This document shows positions 1 to 61,399 of a DNA stretch of 64,000 nucleotides, in pieces. The notes beneath the pieces were generated by a model that was not told the origin of the DNA, made no database searches, and saw only the letters and a list, made by a program, of their open reading frames with translations. The position numbers and the translations under genes were made by a program. Source of the DNA: Ranitomeya imitator (lineage: Eukaryota); contig NC_091285.1 of the NCBI RefSeq assembly GCF_032444005.1, forward strand, positions 638,538,001 through 638,602,000. Reading direction: 5' to 3'. Every line of letters begins with the position of its first letter. Position 1 is the stretch's first letter.

Positions 1-123
1 GCACCTGCCTGTCCCTCTGCATTAACTTCTATGCGACTTCTGAAAATATCCAAGCAAGTATGGAGGAGCGTGGACCTTGCAGTGTGTTCTGCAGGATGAC
101 ATTTCCTTTTTTTACACTTTCAG

Positions 124-251
124 GATATACTCCCGTCTCCTGTTCCTGTGGAATGGGCTGTGGATCATACAACTTCAAGACCGCCAACTCATGTGTCTGC
201 GAATGCCTTAACACAGACTGGACGAGTGCCCGATGCTGCAAGAGCGCCTAG
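124..251 (+). CDS. Terminal coding exon of glycine-rich resistin-like gene, upstream paralog (copy A); earlier exons lie before the window
   Basis: Acceptor ttttacactttcag at 110-123, then (G)YTPVSCSCGMGCGSYNFKTANSCVCECLNTDWTSARCCKSA-stop. This is the C-X-C-X3-C-X10-C-X-C-X-C-X9-CC part of the resistin/RELM signature. 125/128 nt identical to 12631-12758. Confidence 0.9.
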
Positions 252-298
252 TAACCGGTCATCTGGGTTCATTAACACAAATACTCATTTTTTGTAAC

Positions 299-304
299 AA
301 TAAA
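299..304 (+). terminator. Polyadenylation signal of copy A
   Basis: AATAAA 47 nt after the TAG, at the same position as in copy B (12806-12811). Confidence 0.75.
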
Positions 305-651
305 ATACATTTAAAAATAAGTCAGAAGCAGCTTCATTTCTTCATGCAGAGACTGCAGAAAAATGCTCTCATTTGTGCTTTCACTATAGGGAGCTTAGTT
401 TTATCACACAGTTTAGACCTGGGCAAAGTGCAGCCCTCATACTGTATATAGGGGGCTATGCGGGGCCTCACACTGCATACAGGAGGTTATGTGGGGGGGC
501 GGACACAGATCGCAAAGAGCCCCTGTGCACCAGGGCACGATCCACAATAACTGCTGAGAATGAAGCTCTCGTCATAGAGAATCGCCATTATGAAGGCATT
601 CAAAATTAAAGATTGCCCCATTGTGACCCATTTTGAAATATGGATACTATA

Positions 652-1147
652 AAAGGGAGTTATCCAGGAGTATATCATTTTTTTTTCAAGTGCCTAAGAA
701 GTGACAGGCAGGTAGTTACTACCTACCTGCCTGTTGTGCCCCGCGCCGATCTCTGTCAGCACAGATTGGTCATTGACCACTCCTGCCGGCGATTCTGTGG
801 CTTCTCCGATGTCATGTTGATAGAGCAGCGGCTTCTCTTCCACCCTGCTCTGTTGATGGGGCGTGATTTCCAGACGTCATGCTGATTGACAGCCGGTTCC
901 CTGCTGCCAAGCTGTCAATCAATCAGCATGACGTCAGCAGTCACGTCCTGTCGACGGAGCAGCCCAGATGAAGAAGAGTTGTTCTGGTAACGTGGAGCAG
1001 CTGAATCGCCTACGGGAAGGAGTTGGTGACCACACTGAGCTGGCGCCGGATACAACAGGCAGGCGACTGCTTCTATTAGAAACTCTCTGCGCATTAGTTT
1101 TAAGGCTCATAGTAAAAATATAGAGTAATCATGGACAATCCATCTAA
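652..1147. mobile_element. Degenerate T2/Kolobok-type MITE
   Basis: AGGGAGTTATCCA at the left and TGGACAATCCATCT at the right resemble degraded terminal inverted repeats; internal palindrome catgctgattgacagc...gctgtcaatcaatcagcatg; similar internal motif at ~62310-62640. Confidence 0.4.
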
Positions 1148-2819
1148 AGTACTTGGCTATTGGTGCTATAGGACATGGATGCTTGATACGAACACGCTTC
1201 TTCAGGCAGGTATCTAATAAAGCTACAATATATGGAATTAAGAGGTAGTTCCAGCTCCTTAAAATTCCGCGCCCTGTGGTATCGGTGAGCTGGCAGAGGC
1301 TTTTAGCCTTTTTTTCTTTTGTTTATCTAATAAAGCTACAAAGCTATATAGCAATAAAGTAGATAATCTGATAATTGCTGCACCAATATACCGTAATTAA
1401 CACGACCTTATGTCTGTAATCTCAGTAAATCCCTCATAGTTGCCTGGACTGTATTTTGTGATATCTATTAAATGGATGCTGTGACCAAAATCTACCAGTG
1501 GTGTCCATCATCCATAGACCTCAATATTAAGAACATTTATCCGATTTTTACTATATTCTGCATGATGGCCTAATAGCCAGAAAAATATACCAGCTAGGTG
1601 GAAGCCAAAAGAAGACTTTTGTGTCCTCCGTCTGGCCATGACGCTGTATGGTCATAGCTTATTTATATAGCATTTTCTATACCAATGTCCTTAATTATAT
1701 TAGATGTATAGCGTGAAAGAACCTCAGGCCTAATACTTCTCTCCTACCAAGTGCCATTTATATCACTGTTGGTTTAATATGCCCCTACATGTACCAGGGA
1801 CCGGGTGTGACTGCTATCCCACACTCCCCGCAGCTACGCTCCTGTCATACAACTTTTGATTTAGGTGATACAGGAACAGGGGATGTTTGGATGATCAGGA
1901 AGGAAATTCGAGACCTGTAATGGCAGCCATGTTAATTGTCATTCTTGCCTACTTTTCCAAAAAAAGAGGAGGCAAGTTTTCCAGGTGTCACATTCGGACT
2001 GCGTGAGGTGGAAATATGGCGCAGGGATTGAGGGAACACGCAGCTGAGGGCACATAGTACACAACTGCAGTGTCTGAGGTAGTGTCTGTACAGTGGCTCC
2101 ATTATTGGCCCGAAGGGAGGTTTAACCATCCATGGAGGTGGGGTCGGTCATGAAGGAATTTGCTGAGATAATTTCTCAGGTCAAATGAACTTTACTTTCG
2201 CTGAGGAGGCCCTCAAACATAGACGTTAGATATGAGTGAATGGGTTTGAAGGACCCTGGACCAGTGGCCTCGTCAGTAGTCCATTGCCATCGGACAGATC
2301 CCTTCAATCTGCCTCCTTCCTGCTGGAATCCCCAACACCTTTTCTGATTTGTAGCCTGGTGTGACGTCATCGATGTGGCATGACTCAGCCATGATGTCAC
2401 CTGGGGCCTACTAATCAGAAGAGGCATATGAATAAATTAAATCGGATAAATATTCAATATATACAATATCTGACCATGTCAGATGATTTTGACAGAAAAA
2501 CTCCCATAAACATGAAAAATTAGAACAATTGGAGTCATGAGAACTGTCTTTAAAGTAAATTAAAAAAAATTTATTTATACATAGACAGAGTATGAATGGC
2601 AATAAAATCACTAAAATATTAAGTAGACAAGTATTATGAAGGTGAAATTACATGTGAAGGACACAAGGCAAAAAGAGGAGGGTCTGGAGAGCAACACTAC
2701 AATAAATAGAAGTATATGACCGGTAGGACAAAGTTTTTTAATATACTAAACCATAAATAACTGAGTGCATGGACTTTTAAGAGGCAAACAATGCAGTGTA
2801 TAGTTCAAAATTGATCCTT

Positions 2820-3130
2820 ACCCATACCGGTCATATAGTGTTGCCACCAGACTGCCAGCCCCTACGCGCGTTTCGCGTACGCAGATTTGTGTGTCACTAG
2901 TAATATATATATGCCTAGCACCAGCTGTTTGAAAGGCGGGACATTTGGTATGGCGCATGAGCACGCGATCCTAGCGCCTGAAGTTGCATCACTGCTCGGT
3001 ATCCGATATGACGCGAGGGGTCAGGTAGTCATTCCCCTAGCAACCGTGACCCGGAAGCGTCACACATTAAGGCGCCGGCGGCGATGATCCGGAACGCACG
3101 CGCCACGAGCATGCGCACATGTCCCTTACA
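2820..3130 (-). mobile_element. Penelope-like/retrozyme-type remnant with a partial hammerhead motif
   Basis: Minus strand reads ...CGC GAAAC GCGC GTA GGGG at 2860-2877, the 3' half of the motif seen at 15812-15841 and 54565-54611; boundaries uncertain. Confidence 0.35.
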
Positions 3131-3789
3131 CAGAAGTCTAAGCATGGAGAAAGTAAGTGAAAGAGCACAGTGTCTAATATATTAAATAAGCAGATCCACT
3201 GCAATATCCATTGATGAAGAAAGTGCAAAAAGTGTCATCTAAAGTGCATATGTGGCAATAAAAATTGTATCTCATTAAGCGAAATATGATCATAATGAAA
3301 ATATACCACAATATACAATTTGCAAAACAACAGTTATACATGCACAAAAACTGTGTATATTGATTCAATCATTTAAAGAAAAAATTAATAATAAATTAAA
3401 AATAATAATGGTGAAATACTGTGATACAATAGTAAACAACACCATAATTGAGTGAACAACAGATCTAAAAAAAAAATTAAATGACACTCTCCACATTCCA
3501 TAGACAAAAACATCATACATCATAGATATTAATGAATAGTACACACAACCTAACTCATTAATAGCATTATTCACATAGATACTGGCTTAGTATGATGACA
3601 TTCACATCACACCACTGGTTGATGATTATTGTATCCATTCAATAGTCCAAAATTTATGAAGGTACTTCATATGATGTACAGATGATGCGGCAGCAATGTA
3701 ATAAAAGTCACCAAATAATACAACAGCTGTAAGAAAAACAAAAAATAACAAACATAAATAACCATAAAGCCAGACACACACAACATAGA

Positions 3790-4369
3790 ATAAAGCCAAT
3801 CCAGAGAAATTAACCAAAAAAATGACATGGGGTCCCCCTATATTTTATAGCCAGAAAGGCTATATAAGATGACATTAAGCCTGGTTAATAATAGAGAAGC
3901 ATCAATAAGACGCCTATCCATCACTAATGCTATTGTACTGAAAGTGTAAAAAAATAAAAAATAAAGACACAGCCAGAAAAAAGTATTTCATTATTCTTAA
4001 TTTCACCATACTTACCATATTCGAGCGCCTGCAAAAATAAAAGGAAAAATAATAAACCAACCATATACTTACTTTCCGCCATAGTCCGATTAATAACGAA
4101 TATCCCACGACGATCTCCCCTATAGAACAGTGACATCGGGTCACCCTTAGTGTTCGGACATTTAGTTTTCATCGCCCCAGCTGAATGATTTACAGCTACT
4201 AGCCAGCCCGAGTACATGTGGGGGTTGCCTGGTTGCTATGGAATCCCCACATGTAATCAAGCTGTCTAGTAGCTGTAAATCATGCAGCTGCTGCGAGGAA
4301 AACAAAATCTCCGAGCAGTCACAAATACTCGGAGCCCACCCGAGCAACGAGTACACTCGCTCATCTCTA
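3790..4369. mobile_element. Non-autonomous DNA transposon (TAGAGATGAGCGA-terminus family) truncating the pogo element
   Basis: Right terminus CTCGCTCATCTC-TA at 4356-4369, the same terminus as the MITEs at 10840 and 22275. The pogo frame runs into it (..RLNT|RDERV..). Left end not found. Confidence 0.55.
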
Positions 4370-7187
4370 GTGTTTAGTCTTGCAAGCCTTTGCTTGGTGC
4401 TGGGAGTTAAATGAGGCCTGAACATATCCCACACCAATAGACTCCATTTTTGAATAAGTCCACCTGGTCGCCTGCTCCATACTTTACCAACCCATAGCTT
4501 TACACCTTCCTCATCCATCCAGCCATTTTCATTCACATGTACGAAACAACCAACAGGGAGCTTGGGTCTAGGCATTGTTTTTCTTTTAAAAATAATCATT
4601 GTTCTCAGTTTGGCGCCATCAGCTGTGCATCCTAATACCACTGTAAAACTGGATTTCTCATGCCCCGTTGTTTTAATTATAATTTTTTTTTTCACTTTTT
4701 TGATGGGCAGTTTTATTATCAACCATATCAAAATTCATCGGAATTTCATCCATATTTCCAATACTACTTAACGGACAGTCATGTTTAGTGCGCTGTTGTA
4801 TTACGTATCGATGGAAACTATTCACTTTGCTATAAAGATCTGCGGGTAATTTTTGGGCAATTTTCATTTTTTGCCTCAGTACCATATTATGCCTTGCCAT
4901 GAATCTAGTACACCAGGATACAGTGGCCTTTAAGCTGTTGCTGTGATCTGGGTTAGATTTGGCCCACTGAAGTGCAAACTAACGTATCTGATTTCGTCTC
5001 ACTCCATAACCGCTTTGGCGGTGCTCATTCACCATGTCTGCTACAGGTCTTTCAAGTTCTGGCCAATGTGTGGTGCCTCTTCTTAACGCACACTTACCCC
5101 TTGGCATACTCTTTAATGCTTTTTAATTTCCTTTCCAGTCCCGGACCATCTTTTCTGTTACTCCATATTGTCTTGCAGCAGCGCAGTTATTATGTTCCGT
5201 GGCAAAGTTTACAACTTTAAGTTTGAAACTGGCTTCATATTTCTTTCTTCGTGGTGTAGCCATGATGGGGTTTTGACGGCTGGATATTTGTATACTGTAC
5301 TGCATGTACTGGTGCTATACTGTATGAACAGGTACTGGTGATGTACTGTATGTGGTATCCAATATACACCAACCAGCCAATGTACCTTACCAGCGATTGG
5401 CTGGTTGTTGTATACAAATCCGGCTTGGATTGGTCAGCCCTCCCTGTCTCCAAGAGCGGTAGCACATCCCTCTGGTCCGCCCTTGTACCCATTACTGGTA
5501 CCTCCAGAGAGCGCGCTGTGCCCAGAAAAACATGCCTCTTTCACCCCTCTGGCCCGCCCTTGTACCTATTACTGGTACCTCCAGAGCGCGCGCTGTGCCC
5601 AGAAGAACATGCCTCTTTCACCTATCTGGCCCGCCATTGTACCTATTACTGGTACCTCCAGAGAGCGCGCTGTGCCCAGAAGAACATGCCTATTTCACCC
5701 GTCTGGCCCGCCCTTGTACCTATTACTGGTACCTCCAGAGAGTGCGCTGTGCCCAGAAGAACATGCCTCTTTCACCCGTCTGGCCCGCCCTTGTACCTAT
5801 TACTGGTACCTCCAGAGAGCACGCTGTGCCCAGAAGAACATGCCTCTTTCACCCATCTGGCCCGCCCTTGTACCTATTACTGGTACCTCCAGAGAGCACG
5901 CTGTGCCCAGAAGAACATGCCTATTTCACCCGTCTGGCCCGCCCTTGTACCTATTACTGGTACCTCCAGAGAGCACGCTGTGCCCAGAAGAACATGCCTC
6001 TTTCACCCGTCTGGCCCGCCCTTGTACCTATTACTGGTACCTCCAGAGAGCACGCTGTGCCCAGAAGAACATGCCTATTTCACCCGTCTGGCCCGCCCTT
6101 GTACCTATTACTGGTACCTCCAGAGAGAGCGCTATGCCCAGAAGAACATGCCTCTTTCACCCATCTGGCCCGCCCTTGTACCTATTACTGGTGCCTCCAG
6201 AGAGCGCGCTGTGCCCAGAAGAACATGCCTCTTTCACCTATCTGGCCCGCCCTTGTACCTATTACTGGTACCTCCAGAGAGCACGCTGTGCCCAGAAGAA
6301 CATGCCTCTTTCACCCGTCTGGCCCGCCCTTGTACCTATTACTGGCACCTCCAGAGAGCACGCTGTGCCCAGAAGAACATGCCTATTTCACCCGTCTGGC
6401 CCGCCCTTGTACCTATTACTGGTACCTCCAGAGAGAGCGCTATGCCCAGAAGAACATGCCTCTTTCACCCATCTGGCCCGCCCTTGTACCTATTACTGGT
6501 GCCTCCAGAGAGCGCGCTGTGCCCAGAAGAACATGCCTCTTTCACCCCTCTGGCCCGCCCTTGTACCCATTACTGGTACCTCCAGAGAGCACGCTGTGCC
6601 CAGAAGAACATGCCTCTTTCACCCGTCTGGCCCGCCCTTGTACCTATTACTGGTACCTCCAGAGAGTGCGCTGTGCCCAGAAGAACATGCCTCTTTCACC
6701 CGTCTGGCCCGCCCTTGTACCTATTACTGGTACTTCCAGAGAGCGCGCTGTGCCCAGAAGAACATGCCTCTTTCACCCGTCTGGCCCGCCCTTGCATCTC
6801 TGCCTCTCAGATCTTGCTCCTGAGGACTGCACAGTGACGAGGTGAGGGAGCACAGTGAAACTGCGCAGGCACACGTGCAAGATCTGAGAGGCAGAGAAAG
6901 AGGTAATAAGATACAAGGGCGGGCCAGACGGGTGAAAAAGGCGTGTTTTTCTGGGCACAGAGCCGCTGGCTGTTTTCCATACCCCGTGACACTTGCAGCT
7001 TGCTTCACCTTCCCCGGTGAGGTGCCACCTCACCTCTTCATCGGTTCCGCTCCCCCCACCATATCTGCCGACCGCAGATTGCTCCGCAACCACTCTATAA
7101 GACGACACCCGGCGTATAAGACAACTCCCTGACTTTTGAGAAGATTTTCAGTGGTTAAAAAGTCATCTTGTACACCGGAAAATACGG
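4370..7187 (-). mobile_element. Degenerate pogo/Tigger-type (Tc1/mariner superfamily) transposon with frameshifted transposase
   Basis: Terminus TA-CCGTATTTTCCGGTGTACAAGA (- strand from 7187). ATG at 5263 gives MATPRRKKYEASFKLKVV..AAARQYGVTEKMVRDW (Brinker-type DNA-binding domain). Further fragments GNMDEIPMNFD and TTGHEKSSFTVVLGCTADG..WMDE..LLVWDMF (DDE_1 domain) lie in different frames. Confidence 0.88.
5466..6794. repeat. 77-bp minisatellite, about 17 copies, inside the pogo element
   Basis: Unit ggcccgcccttgtacctattactggtacctccagagagcacgctgtgcccagaagaacatgcctctttcacccgtct; unit starts at 5551 and 5628 give period 77. Confidence 0.97.
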
Positions 7188-7758
7188 TATATATAACGAT
7201 TCTTGCCATAATCTTGTTGATGCTGTTCACAAATACCCAAGTCTACACTATAAAGAATTATTTTTAAGGCTTAAAAAAGTAATTTCATAACAAATGTGCC
7301 TATTTATGAGATATGGAAAACAAGATCTGAATCTCCGCACTATGAAACAGAGTAAAGACAGCGTCTCCCACCATGGTGGACAATAAAGAGATGCCATGTA
7401 ATACTATTGTCCAATGCACTCAGTGGGTTTAGAAAACCCAGATTTGGTAAAAAATGGGGTTGTCCAACTTCTATTTTCCTATCAATCCATTTGCATCTCC
7501 ATAAGGAGCATCGAGGAGCAAATCCTATAACGTGATCCCACTGACACAATGATTTTCACCTAAATTTCCAATGAGCTTAATGTATTTATCATCCAAAGGA
7601 GGAAGCACAATGTTCTTTTGTTCTCATGAAATTGAATGGCACGTAAAATAGGTATTTGCATTATTATGGGGTGGTGTCAGGCGGGTACACACCTATTAAA
7701 ATTATAGGGCGAAGTCCGGTGTCAAAAATTCTAGCGTGTGATTGAAAATGTAGCAAGG

Positions 7759-7789: not shown

Positions 7790-7810
7790 ATTTGCACCTT
7801 GCCAAGAAAG
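7790..7810 (+). other. Predicted non-coding exon 1 of copy B (start approximate)
   Basis: Ends AAAG|GTAAGT at 7810/7811; a 170-nt intron ends ccttttgatttgcag at 7980. A non-coding first exon matches mammalian RETN organisation. Confidence 0.65.
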
Positions 7811-7984
7811 GTAAGTAGCTGGGATAATAGGGTGATGCCAGGAAAGGAAGAAAAGATGGTTCAGTAAAGGGGCAGTCAGTAGATATTAGGGTCCTGTAAA
7901 AAGAGTGGCACTGCGGTTATAGGGGATGCCAGGTCAAGGCAGAAAATCTAATATCTCCTGTGTGTCCTTTTGATTTGCAGAAAA

Positions 7985-8033
7985 ATGGCGTTTCTGACGC
8001 TCCTGTTGTGCAGCCTGCTGGTAACCTCGGCAT
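7985..8033 (+). CDS. Glycine-rich resistin-like protein, copy B, coding exon 1 (signal peptide)
   Basis: Strong Kozak aaaaATGG; MAFLTLLLCSLLVTSA hydrophobic leader; phase-1 donor T|GTAAGT at 8033/8034. Confidence 0.88.
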
Positions 8034-8926: not shown

Positions 8927-9352
8927 ATGCACAGTTTGGGTGGCCAAGCGGTGGAGGTTACGGTGGTGGAAGCTCTGGAGGAGGCGGAGGTTACGGTGGT
9001 GGAAGCTCTGGAGGAGGCGGAGGGTACGGTGGTGGAAGCTCTGGAGGAGGCGGAGGTTACGGTGGTGGTGGAAGCACTGGAGGAGGCGGAGGTTACGGTG
9101 GTGGAAGCTCTGGAGGAGGCGGAGGTTACGGTGGTGGAAGCTCTGGAGGAAGTGGAGGTTACGGTGGTGGTGGAAGCTCTGGAGGAAGCGGAGGCAATAA
9201 TGGAGGAAACTCTGGAGGAGGTGGAGGCTATGGTGGAGGAAACTCTGGAGGAAGTGGAAGCAACTCAGGAGGCACCACTACTGCAAAATGTGCATGCTCT
9301 TTGACTTGCATAGATGTAAGAACAAGCGGGAACACCGCCAAGTGCCAATCTG
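8927..9352 (+). CDS. Glycine-rich resistin-like protein, copy B, coding exon 2 (Gly/Ser/Tyr repeats plus start of resistin head)
   Basis: Acceptor gaatttgcag at 8917-8926. Stop-free phase-1 frame YAQFGWPS(GGYGGGSSGGG)n...GGTTTAKCACSLTCIDVRTSGNTAKCQS-G; phase-1 donor G|GTAAGA at 9352/9353. Confidence 0.92.
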
Positions 9353-11429: not shown

Positions 11430-12365
11430 AACATGTTTTAAAAATATAAAAAAGAAAAAGTATAAAAGTACGATTTCCCCCTTTCCCAGATAATTTTTTT
11501 TTTTTAAAAAAGCATAGTCAGTCTTGCCGTTTTTGGAAAACTCCGATCTATAAAGTATAACAGTAATAAAGGGGCTGTCCATTCCTCAGACAACCTCTTC
11601 TCAACTACGATATCCCCCCATGTAAAATAAAAGCCCACACCAGTGCCGGAACCGTACCCACAAAGTCAGCGTCGAGTCGCTTGGGGCCCGTGTGACACGA
11701 CGTGTGATGGGGCTTGCTGGAGGGGAGTACAGGCATGATTTTCTTTTTTTTTTTTTTACATGGGGCAATATAGTAATTGGGAAAGTGTTGTTTGATTAGT
11801 GGACAACCCTAGAGGACAGAGAATAATAGAAAACACCAGAATTGCTCTTTCTCAGTTGCTGCACCTAGCCCTAAAAGATCCAATTAAAAGCTATCAAACT
11901 ATCACATACACCCAAATTGGTACCAATTAAAACGTCAGCTCGCCACCCCAAACCCTAGAGGACAGAGAATAATAGAAAACACTAGAATTGCTGTTTCTCA
12001 GTTGCTGCACCTAGCCCTAAAAGATCCAATTAAAAGCTATCAAACTAATCACATATACCCAAATTGGTACAAATTAAAACGTCAGCTCGCCACCCAAAAA
12101 AAAAATCCATACATAACCATACAAACCTAGGAATCATGTCACCTGGTCATTTTTTCAACACAATGAACACGTTAAAAAAAATAAAATAAAAATATAAAAT
12201 AGTACAGTAAATGGTAAAATAAATGGATCAAAACTATAACTCGTTCCACAAAAAAACGAGCCCTCATACGACAATGTCGACAGACGAATAAAAAAAAAGT
12301 TAAGACTCTTGGAATTAGGGGGGAATGAAATAATTAAAAAAAAAAAAACCCCAGTCATGAAGGGG
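11430..12365. mobile_element. Right part of a piggyBac-like non-autonomous element containing a ~146-bp tandem duplication (11805-12096)
   Basis: Terminus GTCATGAAGGGG-TTAA at 12354-12369 is the reverse complement of the TTAA-CCCCTTCATGAC terminus at 57968. Duplicated unit starts aaccctagagg at 11805 and 11951. Left end uncertain. Confidence 0.6.
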
Positions 12366-12630
12366 TTAAAAGAGGTATACTAGAAAGTTACAACATATAC
12401 ATAGAATATGTCACAATTGTCTAATAGATGTGGGTCTAACCTCTAAGACTTATAGGAATCTCTAGAATAGGGCCCCACGTCTCAGCGCCACAAATGCAGA
12501 GGTGGATGCACCTGCCTGTCCCTCTCCATTAACTTCTATGCGACTTCTGAAAATATCCAAGCAAGTATGGAGGAGCGTGGACCTTGCAGTGTATTCTGCA
12601 GGATGACATTTCCTTTTTTTACACTTTCAG

Positions 12631-12758
12631 GATATACTCCCGTCTCCTGTTCCTGTGGAATGGGCTGTGGATCCTACAACTTCAAGACCGCCAACTCATG
12701 TGTCTGTGAATGCCTTAACACAGACTGGACGAGTGCCCGCTGCTGCAAGAGCGCCTAG
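12631..12758 (+). CDS. Glycine-rich resistin-like protein, copy B, terminal coding exon
   Basis: Acceptor tttacactttcag; completes C-X11-C-X8-C-X-C-X3-C-X10-C-X-C-X-C-X9-CC exactly when joined to 9352. Total CDS 49+426+128=603 nt = 200 aa + stop. Confidence 0.93.
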
Positions 12759-12805
12759 TAACCGGTCATCTGGGTTCATTAACACAAATACTCATTTTTT
12801 GTAAC

Positions 12806-12811
12806 AATAAA
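12806..12811 (+). terminator. Polyadenylation signal of copy B
   Basis: AATAAA 47 nt after the stop. Confidence 0.75.
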
Positions 12812-13190
12812 ACACATTTAAAAAGGAGTCCGAATCGGCTTAATTTCCATATCCAGAGACTGCAGAAAAATGCTCTCATTTGTGCTTTCTCATTAGGGAG
12901 CTTACAGTTTTATCACACAGTTCAGACCTGGGCAAAGTTCAGCCCTCATACTGTATATAGGGGGCTATGTGGGGGCTCATACGGAAGCTAATTGGGGGCT
13001 CATAAGGTATATAGGGGGCTATGTAAGGGGTCATACTGGTTATCTTGGGCAGATATTGTATATAGGTGGCTATGTGGGGGTTCATACTGTATATGGGGCT
13101 ATGTAGGGGCTCACACTGCTTATAGTAGGCTAAGTGGGTGCTCATATGGTATATAGTGGTCTATGTGGTTGATCATACGGTATATAGGGG

Positions 13191-16088
13191 CTACGTCATC
13201 ATCTCGCGAGACCGCAATGCACTCTTCAGACCGGAGCGCGCGAGAAGCGTCGGTAACCGCTTCGATCCGGGGGCCAACAGAGGGCGAGTATATGACTATT
13301 TTTTTATTTTAATTTTTTTTTTTTTTCTAAACAGGGATATGGTGCCCACATTGCTATAGACTGCGTGGGCTGTGCAATATATTACGTGGGCTGGGCAATA
13401 TACTACGTGGGCTGGGCAATATACAACATGGGCTACGCAATATACTACGTGGGCTGCGCAATATACTGCGTGGGCTGCGCAATATACTACGTGGGCTGCG
13501 CAATATACTGCGTGGGCTGGGCAATATACATGGGCTACGCAATATACTACGTGGGCTGTGCAATATACAACGTGGGCTGCGCAATATACTATGTGGTTGG
13601 GCAATGTACTACGTGGGCTGGGCAATATAGTACGTGGGCTGCGCAATATACAATGTGAGCTGGGCAATATACAACGTTGGCTGCGCAATATAATACGTGG
13701 GCTACGCAATATACAATGTGGGCTGCGCAATATATAACGTGGGATGCGCAATATACAACGTGGGCTGCACAATATACAACGTGGGCTGCGCAATATACTA
13801 TGTGGTTGGGCAATATACTACGTGGGCTGCGCAATATACTACGTGGGCTGGGCAATATAGTACGTGGGCTGCGCAATATACAATGTGAGCTGGGCAATAT
13901 ACGTGGGCTGCGCAATATAATACGTGGTTGGGCAATATACTACGTGGGCTATGTGGTATCTAATACTGTATATAGGGGCGCACACTGTATATAGGGAGCT
14001 GTGTGGAGGCTCATACTGTATACAGGGGGACTCTGTGGGATCACACTGTATATAGGGGAAGTGTCACCATAATAATAAAAAAAAAATAGTTATATACTCA
14101 CCCTCCGGTGCCCCCCCCCCCCCCCGGATCAGGAACCGGCCTTTCCGGCTCCTCGCGATGCCCCGGTGACCGCTCCATGCATTGCAGTCTCGCGAGATGA
14201 TGACGTACGGTCTCGCCAGACCACTACGTCATCATCTCGCGAGACCGCAATGCACTCTTCAGACCGGAGCGCGCGAGAAGCGTCGGTAACCGCTTCGATC
14301 CGGGGGCCAACAGAGGGTGAGTATATGATTATTTTTTATTTTAATTCTTTTTTCTTTTTTTTTTTTAACAGGGATATGGTGCCCACATTGCTATAGACTG
14401 CGTGGGCTGTGCAATATATTACGTGGGCTGGGCAATATACTACGTGGGCTGGGCAATATACTACGTGGGCTGCGCAATATACTGCGTGGGCTGCGCAATA
14501 TACTACGTGGGCTGGGCAATATACAACGTGGGCTACGCAATATACTACGTGGGCTGTGCAATATACAACGTGGGCTGCGCAATATACTATGTGGTTGGGC
14601 AATGTACTACGTGGGCTGCGCAATATACTACGTGGGCTGGGCAATATAGTACGTGGGCTGCGCAATATACAATGTGAGCTGGGCAATATACAACGTTGGC
14701 TGCGCAATATAATACGTGGTTGGGCAATATACTAAGTGGGCTGCGCAATATACTACGTGGGCTACGCAATATACAACGTGGGCTGCGCAATATACAACGT
14801 GGGCTGCGCAATATACAACGTGGGATGCGCAATATACAACGTGGGCTGCGCAATATAATACGTGGTTGGGCAATATACTAAGTGGGCTGCGCAATATACT
14901 ACGTGGGCTACGCAATATACAATGTGGGCTGCGCAATATACAACGTGGGCTGCGCAATATACAACGTGGGATGCGCAATATACAACGTGGGCTGCGCAAT
15001 ATACTATGTGGTTGGGCAATATACTACGTGGGCTGGGCAATATAGTACGTGGGCTGCGCAATATACAATGTGAGCTGGGCAATATACAACGTGGGCTGTG
15101 CAATATACTACGTGGGCTACGCAATATACAATGTGGGCTGCGCAATGTACTACGTAGGCTGCGCAATGTACTACGTGGGCTGCGCAATGTACTGCGTGGG
15201 CTGCGCAATGTACTGCGTGGGCTGCGCAATGTACTGCGTGGGCTGCGCAATGTACTGCGTGGGCTGCGCAATGTACTGCGTGGGCTGCGCAATGTACTGC
15301 GTGGGCTGCGCAATGTACTGCGTGTAAAGAACAAGGCAAACACTGAAGGCTGTTATAAACAAGTGCAATCATAATAATAGATGTAATCATATAGTATAAT
15401 CAGCCAATACATGGAAAGTGTAGGACACACCACTGCTAATAAGCTAAACCTCTAAAAAATAGTGCAATAGTCCAAATACATAGAAAAAGTTTATTAGATA
15501 AATACAAAAATGAACAAACAAAGTCAGCAAGGTCAGCAAGGTAGGGAGCGTGAGACAACAAACCTCATGGAGCTAAAGAGCAAGGAAGTGTTCCCCAAAC
15601 AAAAATCAATAAATAGGACCTTAGATGGTGCATATAAAATATAGTGGGCTCACATATAAACCTAACATACCGTCTGATAATTGTATCAAGATCATATTAT
15701 ACATAGTACAAAGTAGCAAACCACAGATGTGTGTAGATACAAATAATGCACATATAAACATAAGAGCATACCACTATAGAATGGGGAAACACACCAGCTC
15801 CTGCCCATCCCGACGCGCGTTTCAGTAAAGTCCTTCCTCAGCGTGCGTGCCATGTATTGAGGCAGGTGGAATATATAGCTGCCAGATCGCCAAGTACAGC
15901 CAACAGGCTCCCACATCACCGCAAAACGGCCACACATGGCACCATCGGAAATACACGGGCCCATGTATATACTGCGTGGGCTGTGCAATGTACTGCGTGG
16001 GCTGTGGAATATACTACGTGGGCTGTGCTATACACTACGCATACATATTCTAGAATACCCGATGCGTTAGAATCGGGCTACCATCTAG
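13191..16088 (+). mobile_element. Composite non-autonomous Helitron sequence with an expanded ~20-21-bp internal minisatellite
   Basis: Ends with hairpin cccgat-gcgttaga-atcggg followed by CTAG at 16085-16088. Unit gtgggctgcgcaatatactac is repeated over 13360-13950 and 14400-15325; the block at 13192 is repeated at 14225. Confidence 0.8.
15326..15960 (-). mobile_element. Penelope-like/retrozyme-type insertion interrupting the Helitron minisatellite
   Basis: AT-rich ~635-bp block flanked on both sides by the minisatellite; - strand carries CTGAGGA..GAAAC GCGC GTC at 15841-15812. Confidence 0.5.
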
Positions 16089-16596
16089 TCTACTATATAA
16101 TTGTCTAAGGGTCACTTCCGTCTGTCTGTCTGTCACGGATATTCATTGGTTGCGGCCTCTGTCTGTCATGGAAATCCAAGTCGCTGATTGGTCGTGCCAA
16201 AACGCCCATGACCAATCAGCGACGGGCACAGTCCGGCAGCAAAATGGCTGCTCTTTCCTCCCCGCAGTCAGTGCACGCTCCATACTCCCCTCCAGTCAGC
16301 GCTCACACAGGCTGTGCAATATACTACATGGCTCTACAATATACTACGTGGCTATGTTATATACTACGTGGCTGACCAATATACTACATACCTGTGCAAT
16401 ACACTACGTGGCTGTTATATACTACGTGGCTGTGGTATATACTACGTACGCTGTGTTACATACTACGTAGCTCTGTTATATACTACGTCGGTTGTGTTAT
16501 AAACTACGTCACTGTGCAATATAGTACGTAGCCTGTGCTATATACTACCTACATATTCTAGAATACCCGATACGTTAGAATCGGGCCACCATCTAG
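16089..16596 (+). mobile_element. Complete short non-autonomous Helitron, head-to-tail with the previous one
   Basis: Starts TCTACTATATAATTGTCTAAGGGTCAC directly after the previous CTAG; ends with hairpin + CTAG|T at 16593-16597. Confidence 0.88.
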
Positions 16597-24922: not shown

Positions 24923-25393
24923 TCACAGCCCCTTCCTCTCAAGCCTTTCCAAAATAGACTGCAGTTTTTTCACGGCTTCCTTCCGTGCTTGCCGAATACC
25001 GTCCTGGCCGCCGGTTTCTACTGAATCTAGCTCTAGTAATTCCTTGGTCAACATTTCTTCTAAACACCGGTAACTCATGTCAGTCTTTTTCCCTACAAAC
25101 TCATCCACTTCTTCTTCCAGATCTTCCACCCTTTCCAAGACCTGGCAGATCTTCAGTATTCCCGGATGTGTGGCACTAGAAAGATCGGCTGGGGGATTGT
25201 TGGCTTCTTTAGGCCTGGGAACTGACTCTGGATTTGAAGGCTCCTTTCTATTATAAATTTGCGGAGAAGAGCTGTAATGAGGGTTTGGTGGAGGAAGGTT
25301 TGGCTTCGGTTCAGAAGGTGGGCATGATTGGGGCATGTCTGCGGGGTAGCCAGGGAATTGCCTTTGATGGTAACCAGGATTTTGAGGCGAATC
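24923..25393 (-). CDS. BAG4: BAG family molecular chaperone regulator 4 (SODD), coding exon 5 with BAG domain
   Basis: Acceptor cttttag|GAT. The C-terminus VLERVEDLEEEVDEFVGKKTDMSYRCLEEMLTKELLELDSVETGGQDGIRQARKEAVKKLQSILERLERKGL-stop closely matches the known BAG4 BAG domain. Confidence 0.97.
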   Translation of the reverse strand, partial: DSPQNPGYHQRQFPGYPADMPQSCPPSEPKPNLPPPNPHYSSSPQIYNRKEPSNPESVPRPKEANNPPADLSSATHPGILKICQVLERVEDLEEEVDEFVGKKTDMSYRCLEEMLTKELLELDSVETGGQDGIRQARKEAVKKLQSILERLERKGL

Positions 25394-27431: not shown

Positions 27432-30400
27432 CAGACCAAAAGTTTGGACACACCTTCTCATTTAAAGATTTTTCTGTATTTTCATGACTGAAAATTGCAC
27501 ATTCACACTGAAGGCATCAAAACTATGAATTAACACATGTGGAATTATAAACTTAACAAAAAAGTGTGAAACAACTGAAAATATGTCTTATATTCTAGGT
27601 TCTTCAAAGTAGCCACCTTTTGCTTTGATGACTGCTTTGCACACTCTTGGCATTCTCTTGATGAGCTTCAAGAGGTAGTCACCGGGAAGACTGTTAGAAT
27701 TTGTATTATGGCAAGAAAAAAGCAGCCAAGTAAAGATAAACGAGTGGCCATCATTATTTTAATAAATGAAGGTCAGTCAGTCTGAAAAATTGGGCAAACT
27801 TTGAAAGTGTCCCCAAGTGCAGTTGCAAAAACCATCAAGCACTACAAAGAAACTGGCTCACATGAGGACCGCCCCAGGAAAGGAAGACCAAGAGTCACCT
27901 CTGCTTCTGAGGATAAGTTTATCTGAGTGACCAGCCTCAGAAATCGCAGGTTAAGAGCAGCTCAGATTAGAGACCAGGTTAATGCCACACAGAGTTCTAG
28001 CAGCAGACACATCTCTACAACAACTGTTAAAAGGAGACTTTGTGCAGCAGGCCTTCATGGTAAAATAGCTGCTAGGAAACCACTGCCAAGGACAGGCAAC
28101 AAGCAGAAGAGACTTGTTTGGGCTAAAGAACACAAGGAATGGACATTAGACCAGTGGAAATCTGTGCTTTGGTCTGATGAGTCCAAATTTGAGATCTTTC
28201 GCTCCAACCACAGTAACATAGTAACATAGTTAGTAAGGCCGAAAAAAGACATTTGTCCATCCAGTTCAGCCTATATTCCATCATAATAAATCCCCAGATC
28301 TACGTCCTTCTACAGAACCTAATTGTATGATACAATATTGTTCTGCTCCAGGAAGACATCCAGGCCTCTCTTGAACCCCCCGACTGAGTTCGCCATCACC
28401 ACCTCCTCAGGCAAGCAATTCCAGATTCTCACTGCCCTAACAGTAAAGAATCCTCTTCTATGTTGGTGGAAAAACCTTCTCTCCTCCAGACGCAAAGAAT
28501 GCCCCCTTGTGCCCGTCACCTTCCTTGGTATAAACAGATCCTCAGCGAGATATTTGTATTGTCCCCTTATATACTTATACATGGTTATTAGATCGCCCCT
28601 CAGTCGTCTTTTTTCTAGACTAAATAATCCTAATTTCGCTAATCTATCTGGGTATTGTAGTTCTCCCATCCCCTTTATTAATTTTGTTGCCCTCCTTTGT
28701 ACTCTCTCTAGTTCCATTATATCCTTCCTGAGCACCGGTGCCCAAAACTGGACACAGTACTCCATGTGCGGTCTAACTAGGGATTTGTACAGAGTCAGTA
28801 TAATGCTCTCATCATGTGTATCCAGACCTCTTTTAATGCACCCCATGATCCTGTTTGCCTTGGCAGCTGCTGCCTGGCACTGGCTGCTCCAGGTAAGTTT
28901 ATCATTAACTAGGATCCCCAAGTCCTTCTCCCTGTCAGATTTACCCAGTGGTTTCCCATTCAGTGTGTAATGGTGACATTGATTCCTTCTTCCCATGTGT
29001 ATAACCTTACATTTATCATTGTTAAACCTCATCTGCCACCTTTCAGCCCAAGTTTCCAACTTATCCAGATCCATCTGTAGCAGAATACTATCTTCTCTTG
29101 TATTAACTGCTTTACATAGTTTTGTATCATCTGCAAATATCGATATTTTACTGTGTAAACCTTCTACCAGATCATTAATGAATATGTTGAAGAGAACAGG
29201 TCCCAATACCGACCCCTGCGGTACCCCACTGGTCACAGCGACCCAGTTAGAAACTATACCATTTATAACCACCCTCTGCTTTCTATCACTAAGCCAGTTA
29301 CTAACCCATTTACACACAATTTCCCCCAGACCAAGCATTCTCATTTTGTGTACCAACCTCTTGTGCGGCACGGTATCAAACGCTTTGGAAAAATCGAGAT
29401 ATACCACATCCAATGACTCACCGTGGTCCAGCCTATAGCTTACCTCTTCATAAAAACTGATTAGATTGGTTTGACAGGAGCGATTTCTCATAAACCCATG
29501 CGGATATGGAGTTAAACAGTTATTCTCATTGAGATAATCCAGAATAACATCCCTCAGAAACCCTTCAAATATTTTACCAACAATAGAGGTTAGACTTACT
29601 GGCCTATAATTTCCAGGTTCACTTTTAGAGCCCTTTTTGAATATTGGCACCACATTTGCTATGCGCCAATCCTGCGGAACAGACCCTGTCGCTATAGAGT
29701 CCCTAAAAATAAGAAATAATGGTTTATCTATTACATTACTTAGTTCTCTTAGTACTCGTGGGTGTATGCCATCCGGACCCGGAGATTTATCTATTTTAAT
29801 CTTATTTAGCCGGTTTCGCACCTCTTCTTGGGTTAGATTGGTGACCCTTAATATAGGGTTTTCATTGTTTCTTGGGATTTCACCTAGCATTTCATTTTCC
29901 ACCGTGAATACCGTGGAGAAGAAGGTGTTTAATATGTTAGCTTTTTCCTCGTCATCTACAACCATTCTTTCCTCACTATTTTTTAAGGGGCCTACATTTT
30001 CAGTTTTTATTCTTTTACTATTGATATAGTTGAAGAACAGTTTGGGATTAGTTTTACTCTCCTTAGCAATGTGCTTCTCTGTTTCCTTTTTGGCAGCTTT
30101 AATTAGTTTTTTAGATAAAGTATTTTTCTCCCTATAGTTTTTTAGAGCTTCAATGGTGCCATCCTGCTTTAGTAGTGCAAATGCTTTCTTTTTACTGTTA
30201 ATTGCCTGTCTTACTTCTTTGTTTAGCCACATTGGGTTTTTCCCATTTCTAGTCCTTTTATTCCCACAAGGTATAAACCGCTTACACTGCCTATTTAGGA
30301 TGTTCTTAAACATTTCCCATTTATTATCTGTATTCTTATTTCTGAGGATATTGTCCCAGTCTACCAGATTAAGGGCATCTCTAAGCTGGTCAAACTTTGC

Positions 30401-31491
30401 CTTCCTAAAGTTCAGTGTTTTTGTGACTCCCTGACAAGTCCCCCTAGTGAAAGACAGGTGAAACTGTACAATATTGTGGTCGCTATTTCCTAAATGCCCA
30501 ACCACCTGCAGATTTGTTATTCTGTCAGGTCTATTAGATAGTATTAGGTCTAAAAGTGCTGCTCCTCTGGTTGGATTCTGCACCAATTGTGAAAGATAAT
30601 TTTTCTTGGTTATTAGCAGAAACCTGTTGCCTTTATGGGTTTCACAGGTTTCTGTTTCCCAGTTAATATCCGGGTAGTTAAAGTCCCCCATAACCAGGAC
30701 CTCATTATGGGTTGCAGCTTCATCTATCTGCTTTAGAAGTAGACTTTCCATGGTTTCTGTTATATTTGGGGGTTTGTAACAGACCCCAATGAGAATCTTT
30801 GTGCGACTCAGAAAAGGTGAACGGATGGACTCTACATGCCTGGTTCCTACCGTGAAGCATGGAGGAGGAGGTGTGATGTTGTGGGGGGGCTTTGCTGGTG
30901 ACACTGTTGGGGATTTATTCAAAATTGAAGGCATACTGAACAAGCATGGCTACCACAGCATCTTGCAGCGGCATGCTATTCTATCCGGTTTGCGTTTAGT
31001 TGGATCATTTATTTTTCAACAGGACAATGACCCCAAACACACCTCCAGGCTGTGTAAGGGCCATTTGACCAAGAAGGAGAGTGATGGGGTGCTGCGCCAG
31101 ATGACCTGGCCTCCACAGTCACCAGACCTGAACCCATTCGAGATGGTTTGGGGTGAGCTGGACCGCAGAGTGAAGGCAAAAGGGCCCACAAGTGCTAAGC
31201 ATCTCTGGGAACTCCTTCAAGATTGTTGGAAGACCATTTCCGGTGACTACCTCTTGAAGCTCATCAAGAGAATGCTAAGAGTGTGCAAAGCAGTCATCAA
31301 AGCAAAAGGTGGCTACTTTGAAGAACCTAGAATATAAGACATATTTTCAGTTATTTCACACTTTTTTGTTAAGTATATAATTCCACATGTGTTAATTCAT
31401 AGTTTTGATGCCTTCAGTGTGAATGTACAATTTTCAGTCATGAAAATACAGAAAAATCTTTAAATGAGAAGGTGTGTCTGTCCAAACCGTT

Positions 31492-44328: not shown

Positions 44329-45350
44329 TGGTGGCCCGATTCTAACGCATCGGGTATTCTAGAATATGCATGTCCACGCAGTATATTGCCCAGCCACGCA
44401 GTATATTGCCCAGCCACGCAGTATATTGCCCAGCCACGCAGTATATAGCAGAGCCGCGTAGTATATTGCCCAGCGATGGAGTATATTGTCCAGCCACATA
44501 GTATATTGCAGATCCACGTAGTATATTGCCCAGCCACGCAGTATATTGCCCAGCCACGCAGTATATAGCAGAGCCGCGTAGTATATTGCCCAGCGATGGA
44601 GTATATTGTCCAGCCACATAGTATATTGCAGATCCACGTAGTATATTGCCCAGGCACGTAGTATATTGCACAGCGATGGAGTATACAGTACAGAGCTACG
44701 TAGTATAGAGACACACACAAAAAAAAAAATAAACATATACTCACCTTCCGAAGGTCCGTTGAAGTCCTGCTATACTCACCCTCCGCCGCCTTTCCCGCTC
44801 CTCTGGACGCTCCCGGGACCGCTCCATTGCAAGCGCAGCTTCCGGTCCCAGGGCTGGTGTGTGCAGAACCTATGATGACGTCGCGGTCACATGACCGTAC
44901 CGTCACAGCAGGTCCTTCTCGCACACCAGCCCTGGGACCAGAAGCTTGCAATGGAGCGGTCCCGGGAGCGTCCAGAGGAGCGAGAAAGGCGGCGGAGGGT
45001 GAGTATAGCAGGTTTTTGTTTTTTTTTTAAATTATTTTTAACATGACATTTTTACTATTGATGCTGCATAGGCAGCATCAATAGTAAATAGTTGGGGACA
45101 CACAGGGCTAATAGCAGCGGTAACGGAGTGCGTTACACCGCGGGCCGTTACCGCTGCCATTAACCCTGTGTGAGCGGGGAGTGGAGGGGATCATGGAGCG
45201 GGCGCCGGGCAGTGACTGCTGGGGAGGGACTAATCGGACTGTGGCCGTCGCTGATTGGTCGTGGCAGCCATGACAGGCAGCTGCCGAGACCAATCAGCGA
45301 ACGAATAACCGTGACAGAAGGACAGACAGACAGACGGAAGGGACCCTTAG
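44325..45350 (-). mobile_element. Non-autonomous Helitron, both ends eroded into (AT)n tracts
   Basis: Reverse complement of the 3' hairpin at 44328-44370, internal 20-bp minisatellite, and reverse complement of TTGTCTAAGGGTC at 45340-45353. Confidence 0.85.
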
Positions 45351-46312: not shown

Positions 46313-46486
46313 NNNNNNNNNNNNNNNNNNNNNNNNNNNNNNNNNNNNNNNNNNNNNNNNNNNNNNNNNNNNNNNNNNNNNNNNNNNNNNNNNNNNNNNN
46401 NNNNNNNNNNNNNNNNNNNNNNNNNNNNNNNNNNNNNNNNNNNNNNNNNNNNNNNNNNNNNNNNNNNNNNNNNNNNNNNNNNNNNN
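46313..46486. other. Assembly gap (N run)
   Basis: Run of N. Confidence 1.
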
Positions 46487-47812: not shown

Positions 47813-47960
47813 NNNNNNNNNNNNNNNNNNNNNNNNNNNNNNNNNNNNNNNNNNNNNNNNNNNNNNNNNNNNNNNNNNNNNNNNNNNNNNNNNNNNNNNN
47901 NNNNNNNNNNNNNNNNNNNNNNNNNNNNNNNNNNNNNNNNNNNNNNNNNNNNNNNNNNNN
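47813..47960. other. Assembly gap (N run)
   Basis: Run of N. Confidence 1.
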
Positions 47961-61330: not shown

Positions 61331-61399
61331 AAAAGCACTTGGTCCTTCTCAGAGATGGAAGAACTCTCATTGGATACTTGAGAAGCATTGACCAGTTTG
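61331..61399 (+). CDS. LSM1: LSM1 coding exon 2 (later exons lie beyond the window)
   Basis: Acceptor tttgttccag; (K)KHLVLLRDGRTLIGYLRSIDQF; donor G|GTAAGT; 69 nt. Confidence 0.97.

What the first reader, a model, noticed from the sequence alone, without database searches (positions are those of the whole stretch)
1..470. Second tandem paralog: the locus is a resistin-like gene array under purifying selection
Seen: 1-470 aligns with 12508-12980 (offset 12507). In the 128-nt terminal exon there are three differences (167/12674 TCA/TCC, 200/12707 TGC/TGT, 233/12740 CGA/CGC) and all are synonymous. The 7.5 kb after copy A and the sequence after copy B are unrelated beyond ~470 nt. Inference: at least two functional same-strand paralogs, probably more upstream of the window, as in expanded defence or structural gene families. 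Three sites are too few for a formal selection test.
Basis: partly seen in the sequence, partly recalled or inferred. Interest (0 to 1): 0.72.

Follow-up and report, generated by a model that had tools for sequence, protein, structure and literature searches.

The report
Second copy of frog resistin-like gene end
The first 473 bases of the window are a real second copy of the last exon and tail of a poison-frog resistin-like gene lying 12.5 kb upstream of the complete copy, but whether it is a whole, working gene, or part of a larger array, could not be shown here.

Summary
Window 1-473 aligns with 12508-12982 at 94.5% identity. Both stretches carry the same 128-nt terminal exon (Pfam Resistin, E 4.6e-13) and differ there at three sites, all synonymous. 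Copy A keeps its splice acceptor, reading frame, stop codon and AATAAA signal, and it keeps intron sequence, so it is a DNA-level duplicate and not a retrocopy.

- Copy A's upstream exons lie outside the window, so its completeness is untested.
- Similarity is 98.4% over 1-305, intron included, but 88% over 306-473. That fits gene conversion or a recent event better than selection alone.
- In four public runs the three "paralog" sites occur in mixed combinations and none carries 200T, so they are shuffled polymorphisms, not fixed differences.
- RNA-like contigs show the exon spliced to exon 3 and polyadenylated at high depth, but with copy B's 3' end. No copy-A 3' UTR was seen in RNA.
- A DNA run holds both 3' flank forms. 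Its depth is ambiguous for two copies and argues against many near-identical ones.
- No further copy lies in the 51 kb downstream, where BAG4 and LSM1 follow.

The scan has already followed up copy B on this same window (s1-279611). Tandem resistin-family duplicates are known in rodents, so this is a modest finding.

The parts
1..123 (+). Copy A: last 123 nt of the intron before the terminal exon (cut by the window start). The acceptor is tttcag|GA, with AG at 122-123.
   Evidence: Homologous to 12508-12630 of copy B's intron 3, 2 differences in 123. The presence of intron sequence excludes a retrocopy.
124..251 (+). Copy A: terminal coding exon (phase-1 start, 41 full codons, stop TAG at 249-251). 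It encodes the C-terminal half of the resistin head.
   Evidence: Pfam PF06954 Resistin, E 4.6e-13, 50 bits against a cut-off of 25. PDB 1rfx/1rgx/1rh7, E 3e-9 to 2e-8. Peptide identical to copy B.
252..320 (+). Copy A: predicted 3' UTR with AATAAA at 299-304. The cleavage site is inferred from copy B.
   Evidence: Signal found. Poly(A) tails start after the B-equivalent of position 320 in the RNA-like contigs of X3 and X4, but those contigs carry B letters at 306 and 318-319.
321..473 (+). Copy A: diverged downstream flank, still homologous to 12828-12982. The homology ends inside a high-copy repeat of about 30 nt (436-500).
   Evidence: 17 differences in 153 nt. K-mer depth of 17-19 thousand at 401-500 in DNA run X1.
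7981..8033 (+). Copy B: exon 2, with ATG at 7985 and the signal peptide MAFLTLLLCSLLVTSA.
   Evidence: Read from the sequence and translated. Same N-terminus as the frog relatives P0001 and P0004.
8927..9352 (+). Copy B: exon 3, a 119-residue Gly/Ser/Tyr tract (a 33-nt coding minisatellite) followed by the first half of the resistin head.
   Evidence: The last 28-30 nt are joined to the terminal exon in the RNA-like contigs of X3, X4 and X5.
12508..12630 (+). Copy B: end of intron 3, counterpart of 1-123.
12631..12758 (+). Copy B: terminal coding exon.
12759..12982 (+). Copy B: 3' UTR (AATAAA at 12806-12811, poly(A) added after about 12827) and the homologous flank.

Best explanation
Window 1-473 is the 3' end (intron end, terminal exon, 3' UTR and about 150 nt of flank) of a second genomic copy of the poison-frog glycine-rich resistin-like gene. 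It arose by DNA-level tandem duplication and lies 12.5 kb upstream of the complete copy, on the same strand. It is most likely the end of a whole upstream paralog. The two copies are kept nearly identical across their transcribed part by gene conversion (concerted evolution). Purifying selection on the cysteine-rich head explains why every exon variant is synonymous. Shown: the duplication, the intact signals, the uneven similarity, and the shuffling of variants among individuals. Inferred: that copy A is complete, and that conversion is the mechanism. Not shown: that copy A is expressed.
For: The alignment and the intact acceptor, frame, stop and AATAAA are. The intron is retained, so this is not a retrocopy. 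Divergence is 5 of 305 in 1-305 against 20 of 168 in 306-473, with a maximum-likelihood change point at 305 and Fisher p = 4e-6; the intron alone against the flank gives p = 6e-4. Letters at 167/200/233 and at 306 occur as mosaics of the window's A and B types in four runs from four studies, as expected if variants are exchanged between copies. DNA run X1, which differs from the assembly, holds both an A-like 3' flank form (3 substitutions and 1 insertion from A) and a B-type form (11 differences), at depths 7.85 and 5.5. No assembly gap lies between A and B, and the sequences after A and after B are unrelated, so they are not simple alleles. All four exon variants are synonymous, P = 0.002-0.005. 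Tandem duplication with suspected concerted evolution is already described for rodent Retnl genes (PMC4467842).
Against: The RNA-like contigs of X3 and X4 carry only the B-type 3' end; no A-type 3' UTR was seen, although contigs show presence and not absence. In X1 the summed depth of the two forms (13-16) is only 1.2-1.5 times that of the flank (10.4-12), not 2 times. The change point coincides with the end of the transcript, so constraint on transcribed sequence could add to the pattern. The mosaics could partly come from bubble-popping in k=31 contigs.
Confidence: 0.55

Rival explanations
1. Copy A is only a partial duplicate (a 3' gene fragment) or a pseudogene whose upstream exons are missing or disabled. 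Its clean exon reflects recent conversion from copy B, not function.
For: Only 473 nt of homology are visible. No A-type 3' UTR appears in the RNA-like contigs of X3 and X4, while B-type transcripts are very abundant at depths 877 and 2364. Conversion from B would keep a dead exon intact. One protein per species was found in four other frogs.
Against: The acceptor, frame, stop and poly(A) signal are all intact. Homology runs up to the window edge and is not seen to stop. In run X5 an A-like contig (86G, 2-nt deletion at 113) continues 626 nt upstream of the window start. The 12.5 kb spacing leaves room for a 5 kb gene.
Confidence: 0.2
2. Assembly artefact: A and B are two haplotypes of one locus placed in tandem, or A's block was mis-joined at the high-copy repeat at 436-500.
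For: Over 1-305, A and B differ no more than alleles do in other runs. The two forms in X1 have depths of 5.5-8.9 each against 10.4-12 in the flank, closer to 1 times in sum than to 2 times. No X1 contig bridges 450-833. The homology ends in a repeat with k-mer depth of 17-19 thousand.
Against: There is no N gap between A and B. What follows A (474-7758, leading into B's own promoter) is unrelated to what follows B, and a false haplotype duplication would not give that. Differences of 11 in 41 nt at 306-346 are extreme for alleles. Both forms are present in the assembled animal and in X1. The tool itself warns that contig depth is not a copy number.
Confidence: 0.12
3. One reading: a larger array of three or more functional paralogs extending upstream, kept alike by purifying selection, as in expanded defence gene families.
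For: Two copies lie in tandem on one strand. Copy B is the last before BAG4, so any others would lie upstream. All exon variants are synonymous. In X3 and X4 the junction unitig breaks 28 nt upstream of the exon 3/4 joint, which hints at more than one exon 3 form in RNA.
Against: In DNA run X1 a single contig covers the exon at depth 15.4 against 10.4-12 in the flank, so there are not three or more near-identical copies. The intron is as conserved as the exon, so selection does not explain the likeness. The relatives in four other frogs are one protein each.
Confidence: 0.1

Closest known systems
Rodent Retnl cluster (Retnla/Retnlb/Retnlg), as described in PMC4467842
   Same: Resistin-family genes multiplied by tandem duplication, with phylogenies that suggest concerted evolution. 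They have three coding exons and encode secreted cysteine-rich proteins.
   Different: The rodent proteins are about 110 aa and have the usual N-terminal part. The frog gene carries a 119-residue Gly/Ser/Tyr tract instead, lies beside BAG4-LSM1 and not in the Retn (STXBP2-MCEMP1) or Retnl neighbourhoods, and only two copies are seen, one of them incomplete in the window.
Glycine-rich resistin-like proteins of other hyloid frogs (P0001 Anomaloglossus baeobatrachus, P0002 Rhinoderma darwinii, P0003 Engystomops pustulosus, P0004 Bufo gargarizans 'trihydrophobin-like')
   Same: Same build: signal peptide, Gly-rich tract, KCxCxxxC motif, resistin head. The part encoded by the terminal exon is 76% identical to P0001.
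   Different: Their Gly tracts are shorter. One protein per species was found, with no sign of a second copy.
Mammalian resistin and RELM-beta (PDB 1rfx, 1rgx, 1rh7)
   Same: The cysteine spacing of the head is identical. There is a sequence match of E 3e-9. The modelled head of the frog relative superposes at 1.0-1.1 A rmsd over 57 residues.
   Different: There is no helical stalk. The 29-residue helix region of the lizard (Pogona) resistin is absent in frogs, and the Gly tract models as disordered.

Membership tests
Resistin / RELM family (Pfam PF06954) | Sequence match to the family profile above its curated cut-off | tested here: met
   Both terminal exons score 50 bits against a cut-off of 25, E 4.6e-13, profile positions 48-87 of 88. 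PDB resistin chains match at E 3e-9.
Resistin / RELM family (Pfam PF06954) | C-terminal cysteine signature C-X11-C-X8-C-X-C-X3-C-X10-C-X-C-X-C-X9-CC-X3-6-end (signature recalled from the founding papers, not re-read here) | tested here: met
   Copy B has gaps of 1,3,11,8,1,3,10,1,1,9,0 and 3 residues after the last Cys, i.e. the full signature plus two extra N-terminal Cys. In copy A only the part encoded by the terminal exon (C-X-C-X3-C-X10-C-X-C-X-C-X9-CC-X3-end) is visible, and it is met.
Resistin / RELM family (Pfam PF06954) | Head folds as the resistin beta-sandwich | tested here: met
   Tested on the natural relative P0001, not on the window's own protein. AlphaFold2 gives head pLDDT of 82-92, and Foldseek finds 1rfx, 1rgx and 1rh7 at E 6e-7, rmsd 0.9-1.1 over 57 residues.
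Resistin / RELM family (Pfam PF06954) | N-terminal alpha-helical stalk that forms the trimeric coiled coil | tested here: not met
   In copy B a 119-residue tract of 75 Gly, 21 Ser and 8 Tyr lies between the signal peptide and the head. The stalk of Pogona resistin is a gap in all frog sequences. The P0001 model has no helix after the signal peptide. For copy A this region lies outside the window.
Resistin / RELM family (Pfam PF06954) | Three coding exons with introns at homologous places (PMC4467842) | tested here: inconclusive
   Copy B has three coding exons with phase-1 introns. Homology of the intron positions with mammals was not tested. Copy A shows only its last exon.
Tandem array of functional paralogs | Two or more same-strand copies close together | tested here: met
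   The terminal exon and its flanks occur twice, 12,507 nt apart on the same strand. No third copy lies in the window.
Tandem array of functional paralogs | Each copy complete (promoter, all exons, open frame) | not testable with these tools
Tandem array of functional paralogs | Each copy expressed | tested here: inconclusive
   Spliced, polyadenylated transcripts of this exon are abundant in X3 and X4 but end with B-type letters at 306 and 318-319. The exon letters are mosaics. In X5 the contig stops at 305, where A and B fork. Only contigs were available, not raw reads.
Tandem array of functional paralogs | Two real loci rather than alleles (read depth, spanning reads) | tested here: inconclusive
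   In X1 the forms have depths of 5.5-8.9 each, the shared exon contig 15.4 and the flank 10.4-12, which lies between the one-locus and two-locus expectations.
Tandem array of functional paralogs | Excess of synonymous over non-synonymous change | tested here: met
   0 non-synonymous against 3 synonymous changes between A and B (P = 0.009-0.018), or 4 of 4 with the 158 variant of X3 (P = 0.002-0.005). The numbers are small and the sites are polymorphic, not fixed.

The most novel reading that the evidence does not exclude
The poison-frog glycine-rich resistin-like gene exists as a pair, or a small array, of expressed tandem paralogs that exchange sequence by gene conversion across the head exon, while their repetitive Gly-tract exons are free to differ in length. 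This would be a defence-type locus that produces variants of one secreted protein, in a vertebrate class where only a single, incomplete resistin gene had been reported in 2015.
Probability: 0.2. Interest if true: 0.5.

Novelty: new member of a known kind. Interest (0 to 1): 0.3.

Why it matters
If copy A is a whole, expressed gene, frogs would join rodents as a lineage in which a resistin-family gene has multiplied in tandem. Here that would be an unstudied form in which a glycine-rich tract replaces the helical stalk. The pair would then allow a clean test of concerted evolution and of Gly-tract length variation in a very highly expressed secreted protein. If copy A is a fragment or an artefact, the finding matters only as an annotation warning. 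By itself, a second copy of one exon is an ordinary result.

Tried and rejected
- **Retrocopy:** rejected, because copy A keeps 123 nt of intron.
- **More copies inside the window:** none by tblastn or self-BLAST.
- **Word search with exon 3:** swamped by Gly-rich proteins, one true hit.
- **Word search with the terminal exon alone:** no candidates.
- **Head-only search with P0001:** five proteins, none from this species.
- **Metagenome scan for a 32-nt exon pattern:** 0 matches.
- **Literature:** no paper on frog glycine-rich resistin-like proteins or on resistin in poison frogs.
- **Copy number from contig depth:** ambiguous.
- **Big representative-protein search:** not run, because Pfam settles the family and the claim does not rest on absence of relatives.
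- **Joined spliced protein of copy B:** never built or searched.
- **Cross-species dN/dS:** not possible, because no DNA of the relatives could be fetched.

Full report
**Observation.** Window 1-473 aligns with 12508-12982 at 94.5% identity (24 mismatches, one 2-nt indel at 396, 737 bits, E 0.0). Each stretch holds:
- the end of an intron, with acceptor tttcag|GA;
- a 128-nt terminal exon (124-251 in A, 12631-12758 in B) ending in TAG;
- an AATAAA signal 48 nt after the stop (299-304 in A, 12806-12811 in B);
- about 150 nt of flank.

The exon differs at 167, 200 and 233, all synonymous third positions, and the two 41-codon peptides are identical. After about 473 nt the two sequences share only units of a high-copy repeat of about 30 nt. 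The one refinement is that the offset shifts by 2 nt after position 396.

**What the exon encodes.** Both exons match Pfam Resistin (PF06954) at 50 bits against a cut-off of 25. They also match the crystal-structure sequences of mouse resistin and RELM-beta at E 3e-9 to 2e-8.

Copy B is a complete gene:
- a TATA-like box near 7758 and an untranslated first exon ending at 7810, both read from the sequence and inferred;
- exon 2 at 7981-8033, with ATG at 7985 and the signal peptide;
- exon 3 at 8927-9352, a 119-residue tract of 75 Gly, 21 Ser and 8 Tyr, followed by the first half of the head;
- the terminal exon.

The Gly tract is a 33-nt coding minisatellite of about 9 units. The cysteine gaps of the head are 1,3,11,8,1,3,10,1,1,9,0, with three residues after the last Cys. 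That is the resistin signature plus two extra N-terminal cysteines (the signature itself is recalled from the founding papers).

I did not build or search the joined protein. The exons were searched separately by reference.

**Relatives.**
- A word search with exon 3 found one true relative, from the frog Anomaloglossus baeobatrachus.
- A head-only search with that protein found the same build in Rhinoderma darwinii, Engystomops pustulosus and Bufo gargarizans. It also found a normal lizard (Pogona) resistin with a helical stalk.
- In the alignment the 29-residue stalk of the lizard protein is a gap in every frog.
- An AlphaFold2 model of the Anomaloglossus protein has a confident head (pLDDT 82-92) that superposes on 1rfx, 1rgx and 1rh7 at about 1 A rmsd over 57 residues. 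Its Gly tract is disordered and it has no helix beyond the signal peptide.
- This matches the earlier follow-up of copy B on this window (s1-279611). Another note of the scan (s1-294684) calls the genome a poison frog's.

**Is copy A a separate, working gene?** The visible part is clean. The acceptor, frame, stop and poly(A) signal are intact, and the intron is retained, so it is a DNA-level duplicate and not a retrocopy.

No assembly gap lies between A and B; the only N runs are at 46313-46486 and 47813-47960. The 7.3 kb after A leads into B's own promoter and is unrelated to what follows B. A simple tandem placement of two haplotypes would not give that arrangement.

Exons 1-3 of copy A would lie before window base 1.

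**Pattern of similarity.**

| Segment | Differences |
|---|---|
| Intron, 1-123 | 2 of 123 |
| Exon, 124-251 | 3 of 128 |
| 3' UTR, 252-320 | 3 of 69 |
| Flank, 321-473 | 17 of 153 |

The best single change point is at 305: 5 of 305 before it against 20 of 168 after it, Fisher p = 4e-6. The intron alone against 306-473 gives p = 6e-4.

Because the intron is as alike as the exon, purifying selection cannot be the main reason for the 98.4% block. Gene conversion, or a recent event overlaid on an older duplication, fits better. The break lies within about 15 nt of the poly(A) site, so constraint on transcribed sequence may add to the pattern.

Selection on the peptide is still indicated. Three of three differences are synonymous by chance with P = 0.009-0.018.

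**Public reads.** Only one call each of the two reads tools was allowed, and all runs were held as Logan contigs.

Transcripts:
- Three RNA-like runs from three studies (X3, X4, X5) each hold a contig on 123-317 or 123-305.
- Its upstream loose end is the last 28-30 nt of exon 3, which is the exon 3/exon 4 splice.
- In X3 the contig continues as GG plus a poly(A) tail. In X4 it continues as GGAAA plus adapter.
- Depths are 877, 2364 and 34, against 12.6, 34.6 and 10.1 for intron contigs. The gene is therefore strongly expressed.
- The letters at 306 (C) and 318-319 (GG) are copy B's. No contig with copy A's 3' UTR was seen in X3 or X4. Contigs show presence, not absence.

Letters at the three exon sites, with DNA run X1 included:

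| Source | 167 | 200 | 233 | Note |
|---|---|---|---|---|
| Window copy A | A | C | A | |
| Window copy B | C | T | C | |
| X3 | A | C | A | also 158 C>A, a synonymous change (GGC to GGA) |
| X4 | A | C | C | |
| X5 | C | C | A | |
| X1 (DNA) | C | C | A | |

No run has 200T, which sits at a CpG. The three sites are therefore not fixed paralog markers. They are polymorphisms found in several combinations and unlinked from the 3' flank type. Conversion between copies would give this pattern, although k=31 bubble-popping may contribute. With 158, all four exon variants are synonymous (P = 0.002-0.005).

Copy number in DNA run X1, which is not identical to the assembly:
- At 264-376 it holds two forms: an A-like one (3 substitutions and 1 insertion, depth 7.85) and a B-type one (11 differences, depth 5.5).
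- At 34-144 it also holds two forms (depths 8.9 and 6.89).
- One shared exon contig has depth 15.4, and the A-side flank contigs have depths 10.4-12.
- The ratio of shared to flank depth, about 1.4, lies between the one-locus and two-locus expectations, and the tool warns that contig depth is not a copy number. The haplotype-artefact rival therefore remains open at low probability.
- The same figures argue against three or more near-identical copies.

**Array size and setting.** tblastn finds no further copy in the window. Downstream of B lie a BAG-domain exon on the minus strand (24926-25393, E 1.3e-19) and an LSM exon on the plus strand (61309-61431), which is a BAG4-LSM1 arrangement. Copy B is therefore the last copy on this side. 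BAG4 and LSM1 are not mentioned in PMC4467842, which places human RETN between STXBP2 and MCEMP1.

**Known context.** PMC4467842 reports the following:
- resistin genes of about 110 aa with three coding exons;
- one incomplete gene in Xenopus;
- tandem Retnl clusters in rodents, with possible concerted evolution.

No paper on frog glycine-rich resistin-like proteins was found.

**Verdict.** My estimates are:
- about 0.55 that this is the end of a whole second paralog homogenised with copy B by conversion;
- 0.2 that it is a fragment or pseudogene;
- 0.12 that it is an assembly artefact;
- 0.1 that there is a larger array.

As a tandem duplicate in a family already known to duplicate in tandem, it is a new member of a known kind and of modest interest. 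The more unusual feature, the Gly-tract architecture, belongs to the sibling finding already followed up on this window.

Noticed in passing
window 436-500 and 12947-13193: The A/B homology ends inside units of a repeat of about 30 nt (GGGGCTATGTGGGGGCTCATACTGTATATAG-like). Its k-mer depth in DNA run X1 is 17-19 thousand. Copy A has about 2 units and copy B has several, followed by long arrays.
   Followed up: partly
window 13356-13950 and 14393-15324 (relatives at 16310-16548 and 44374-44707): A 21-nt minisatellite (ATATACTACGTGGGCTGCGCA) of 29 and 45 copies lies just downstream of copy B, with related arrays elsewhere in the window.
   Followed up: no
window 5471-6794: A 77-nt satellite of 17 copies, 95% alike, lies in the spacer between the two copies.
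   Followed up: no
window 700-960: A palindromic, inverted-repeat element (704-734 and 845-962) has k-mer depth in the thousands and many internal-deletion joints in DNA run X1. It looks like a high-copy MITE-like element.
   Followed up: no
window 8953-9252: The Gly/Ser/Tyr tract of exon 3 is a 33-nt coding minisatellite (8.9 copies, 88% matches) and is therefore prone to length change.
   Followed up: partly
window 28322-30949, minus strand: An uninterrupted 876-codon frame carries an endonuclease and a reverse transcriptase domain (RVT_1, E 1e-32). It is an apparently intact LINE ORF2 inside the BAG4-like gene.
   Followed up: partly
window 24926-25393 (-) and 61309-61431 (+): A BAG-domain exon and an LSM-domain exon suggest a BAG4-LSM1 head-to-head pair. 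The resistin-like copy B converges on BAG4's 3' end. This is not the STXBP2-MCEMP1 neighbourhood of Retn described in PMC4467842.
   Followed up: partly
alignment A1 (P0001-P0005 with window 9262-9351): Frog proteins keep the KCxCxxxC motif that in the lizard (Pogona) resistin precedes the helical stalk. The 29-residue stalk is missing right after it, so the third cysteine of the motif takes the place of the first head cysteine at the canonical X11 spacing.
   Followed up: partly
window 9322-9352 (exon 3 end of copy B), seen through runs X3 and X4: In both RNA-like runs the junction unitig breaks exactly 28 nt upstream of the exon 3/exon 4 joint, at very high depth (5000 in X4). This suggests two exon 3 variants in the transcripts, either paralogs or alleles.
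   Followed up: no
window 11805-12099: A 146-nt unit is repeated twice (95% alike) in intron 3 of copy B.
   Followed up: no
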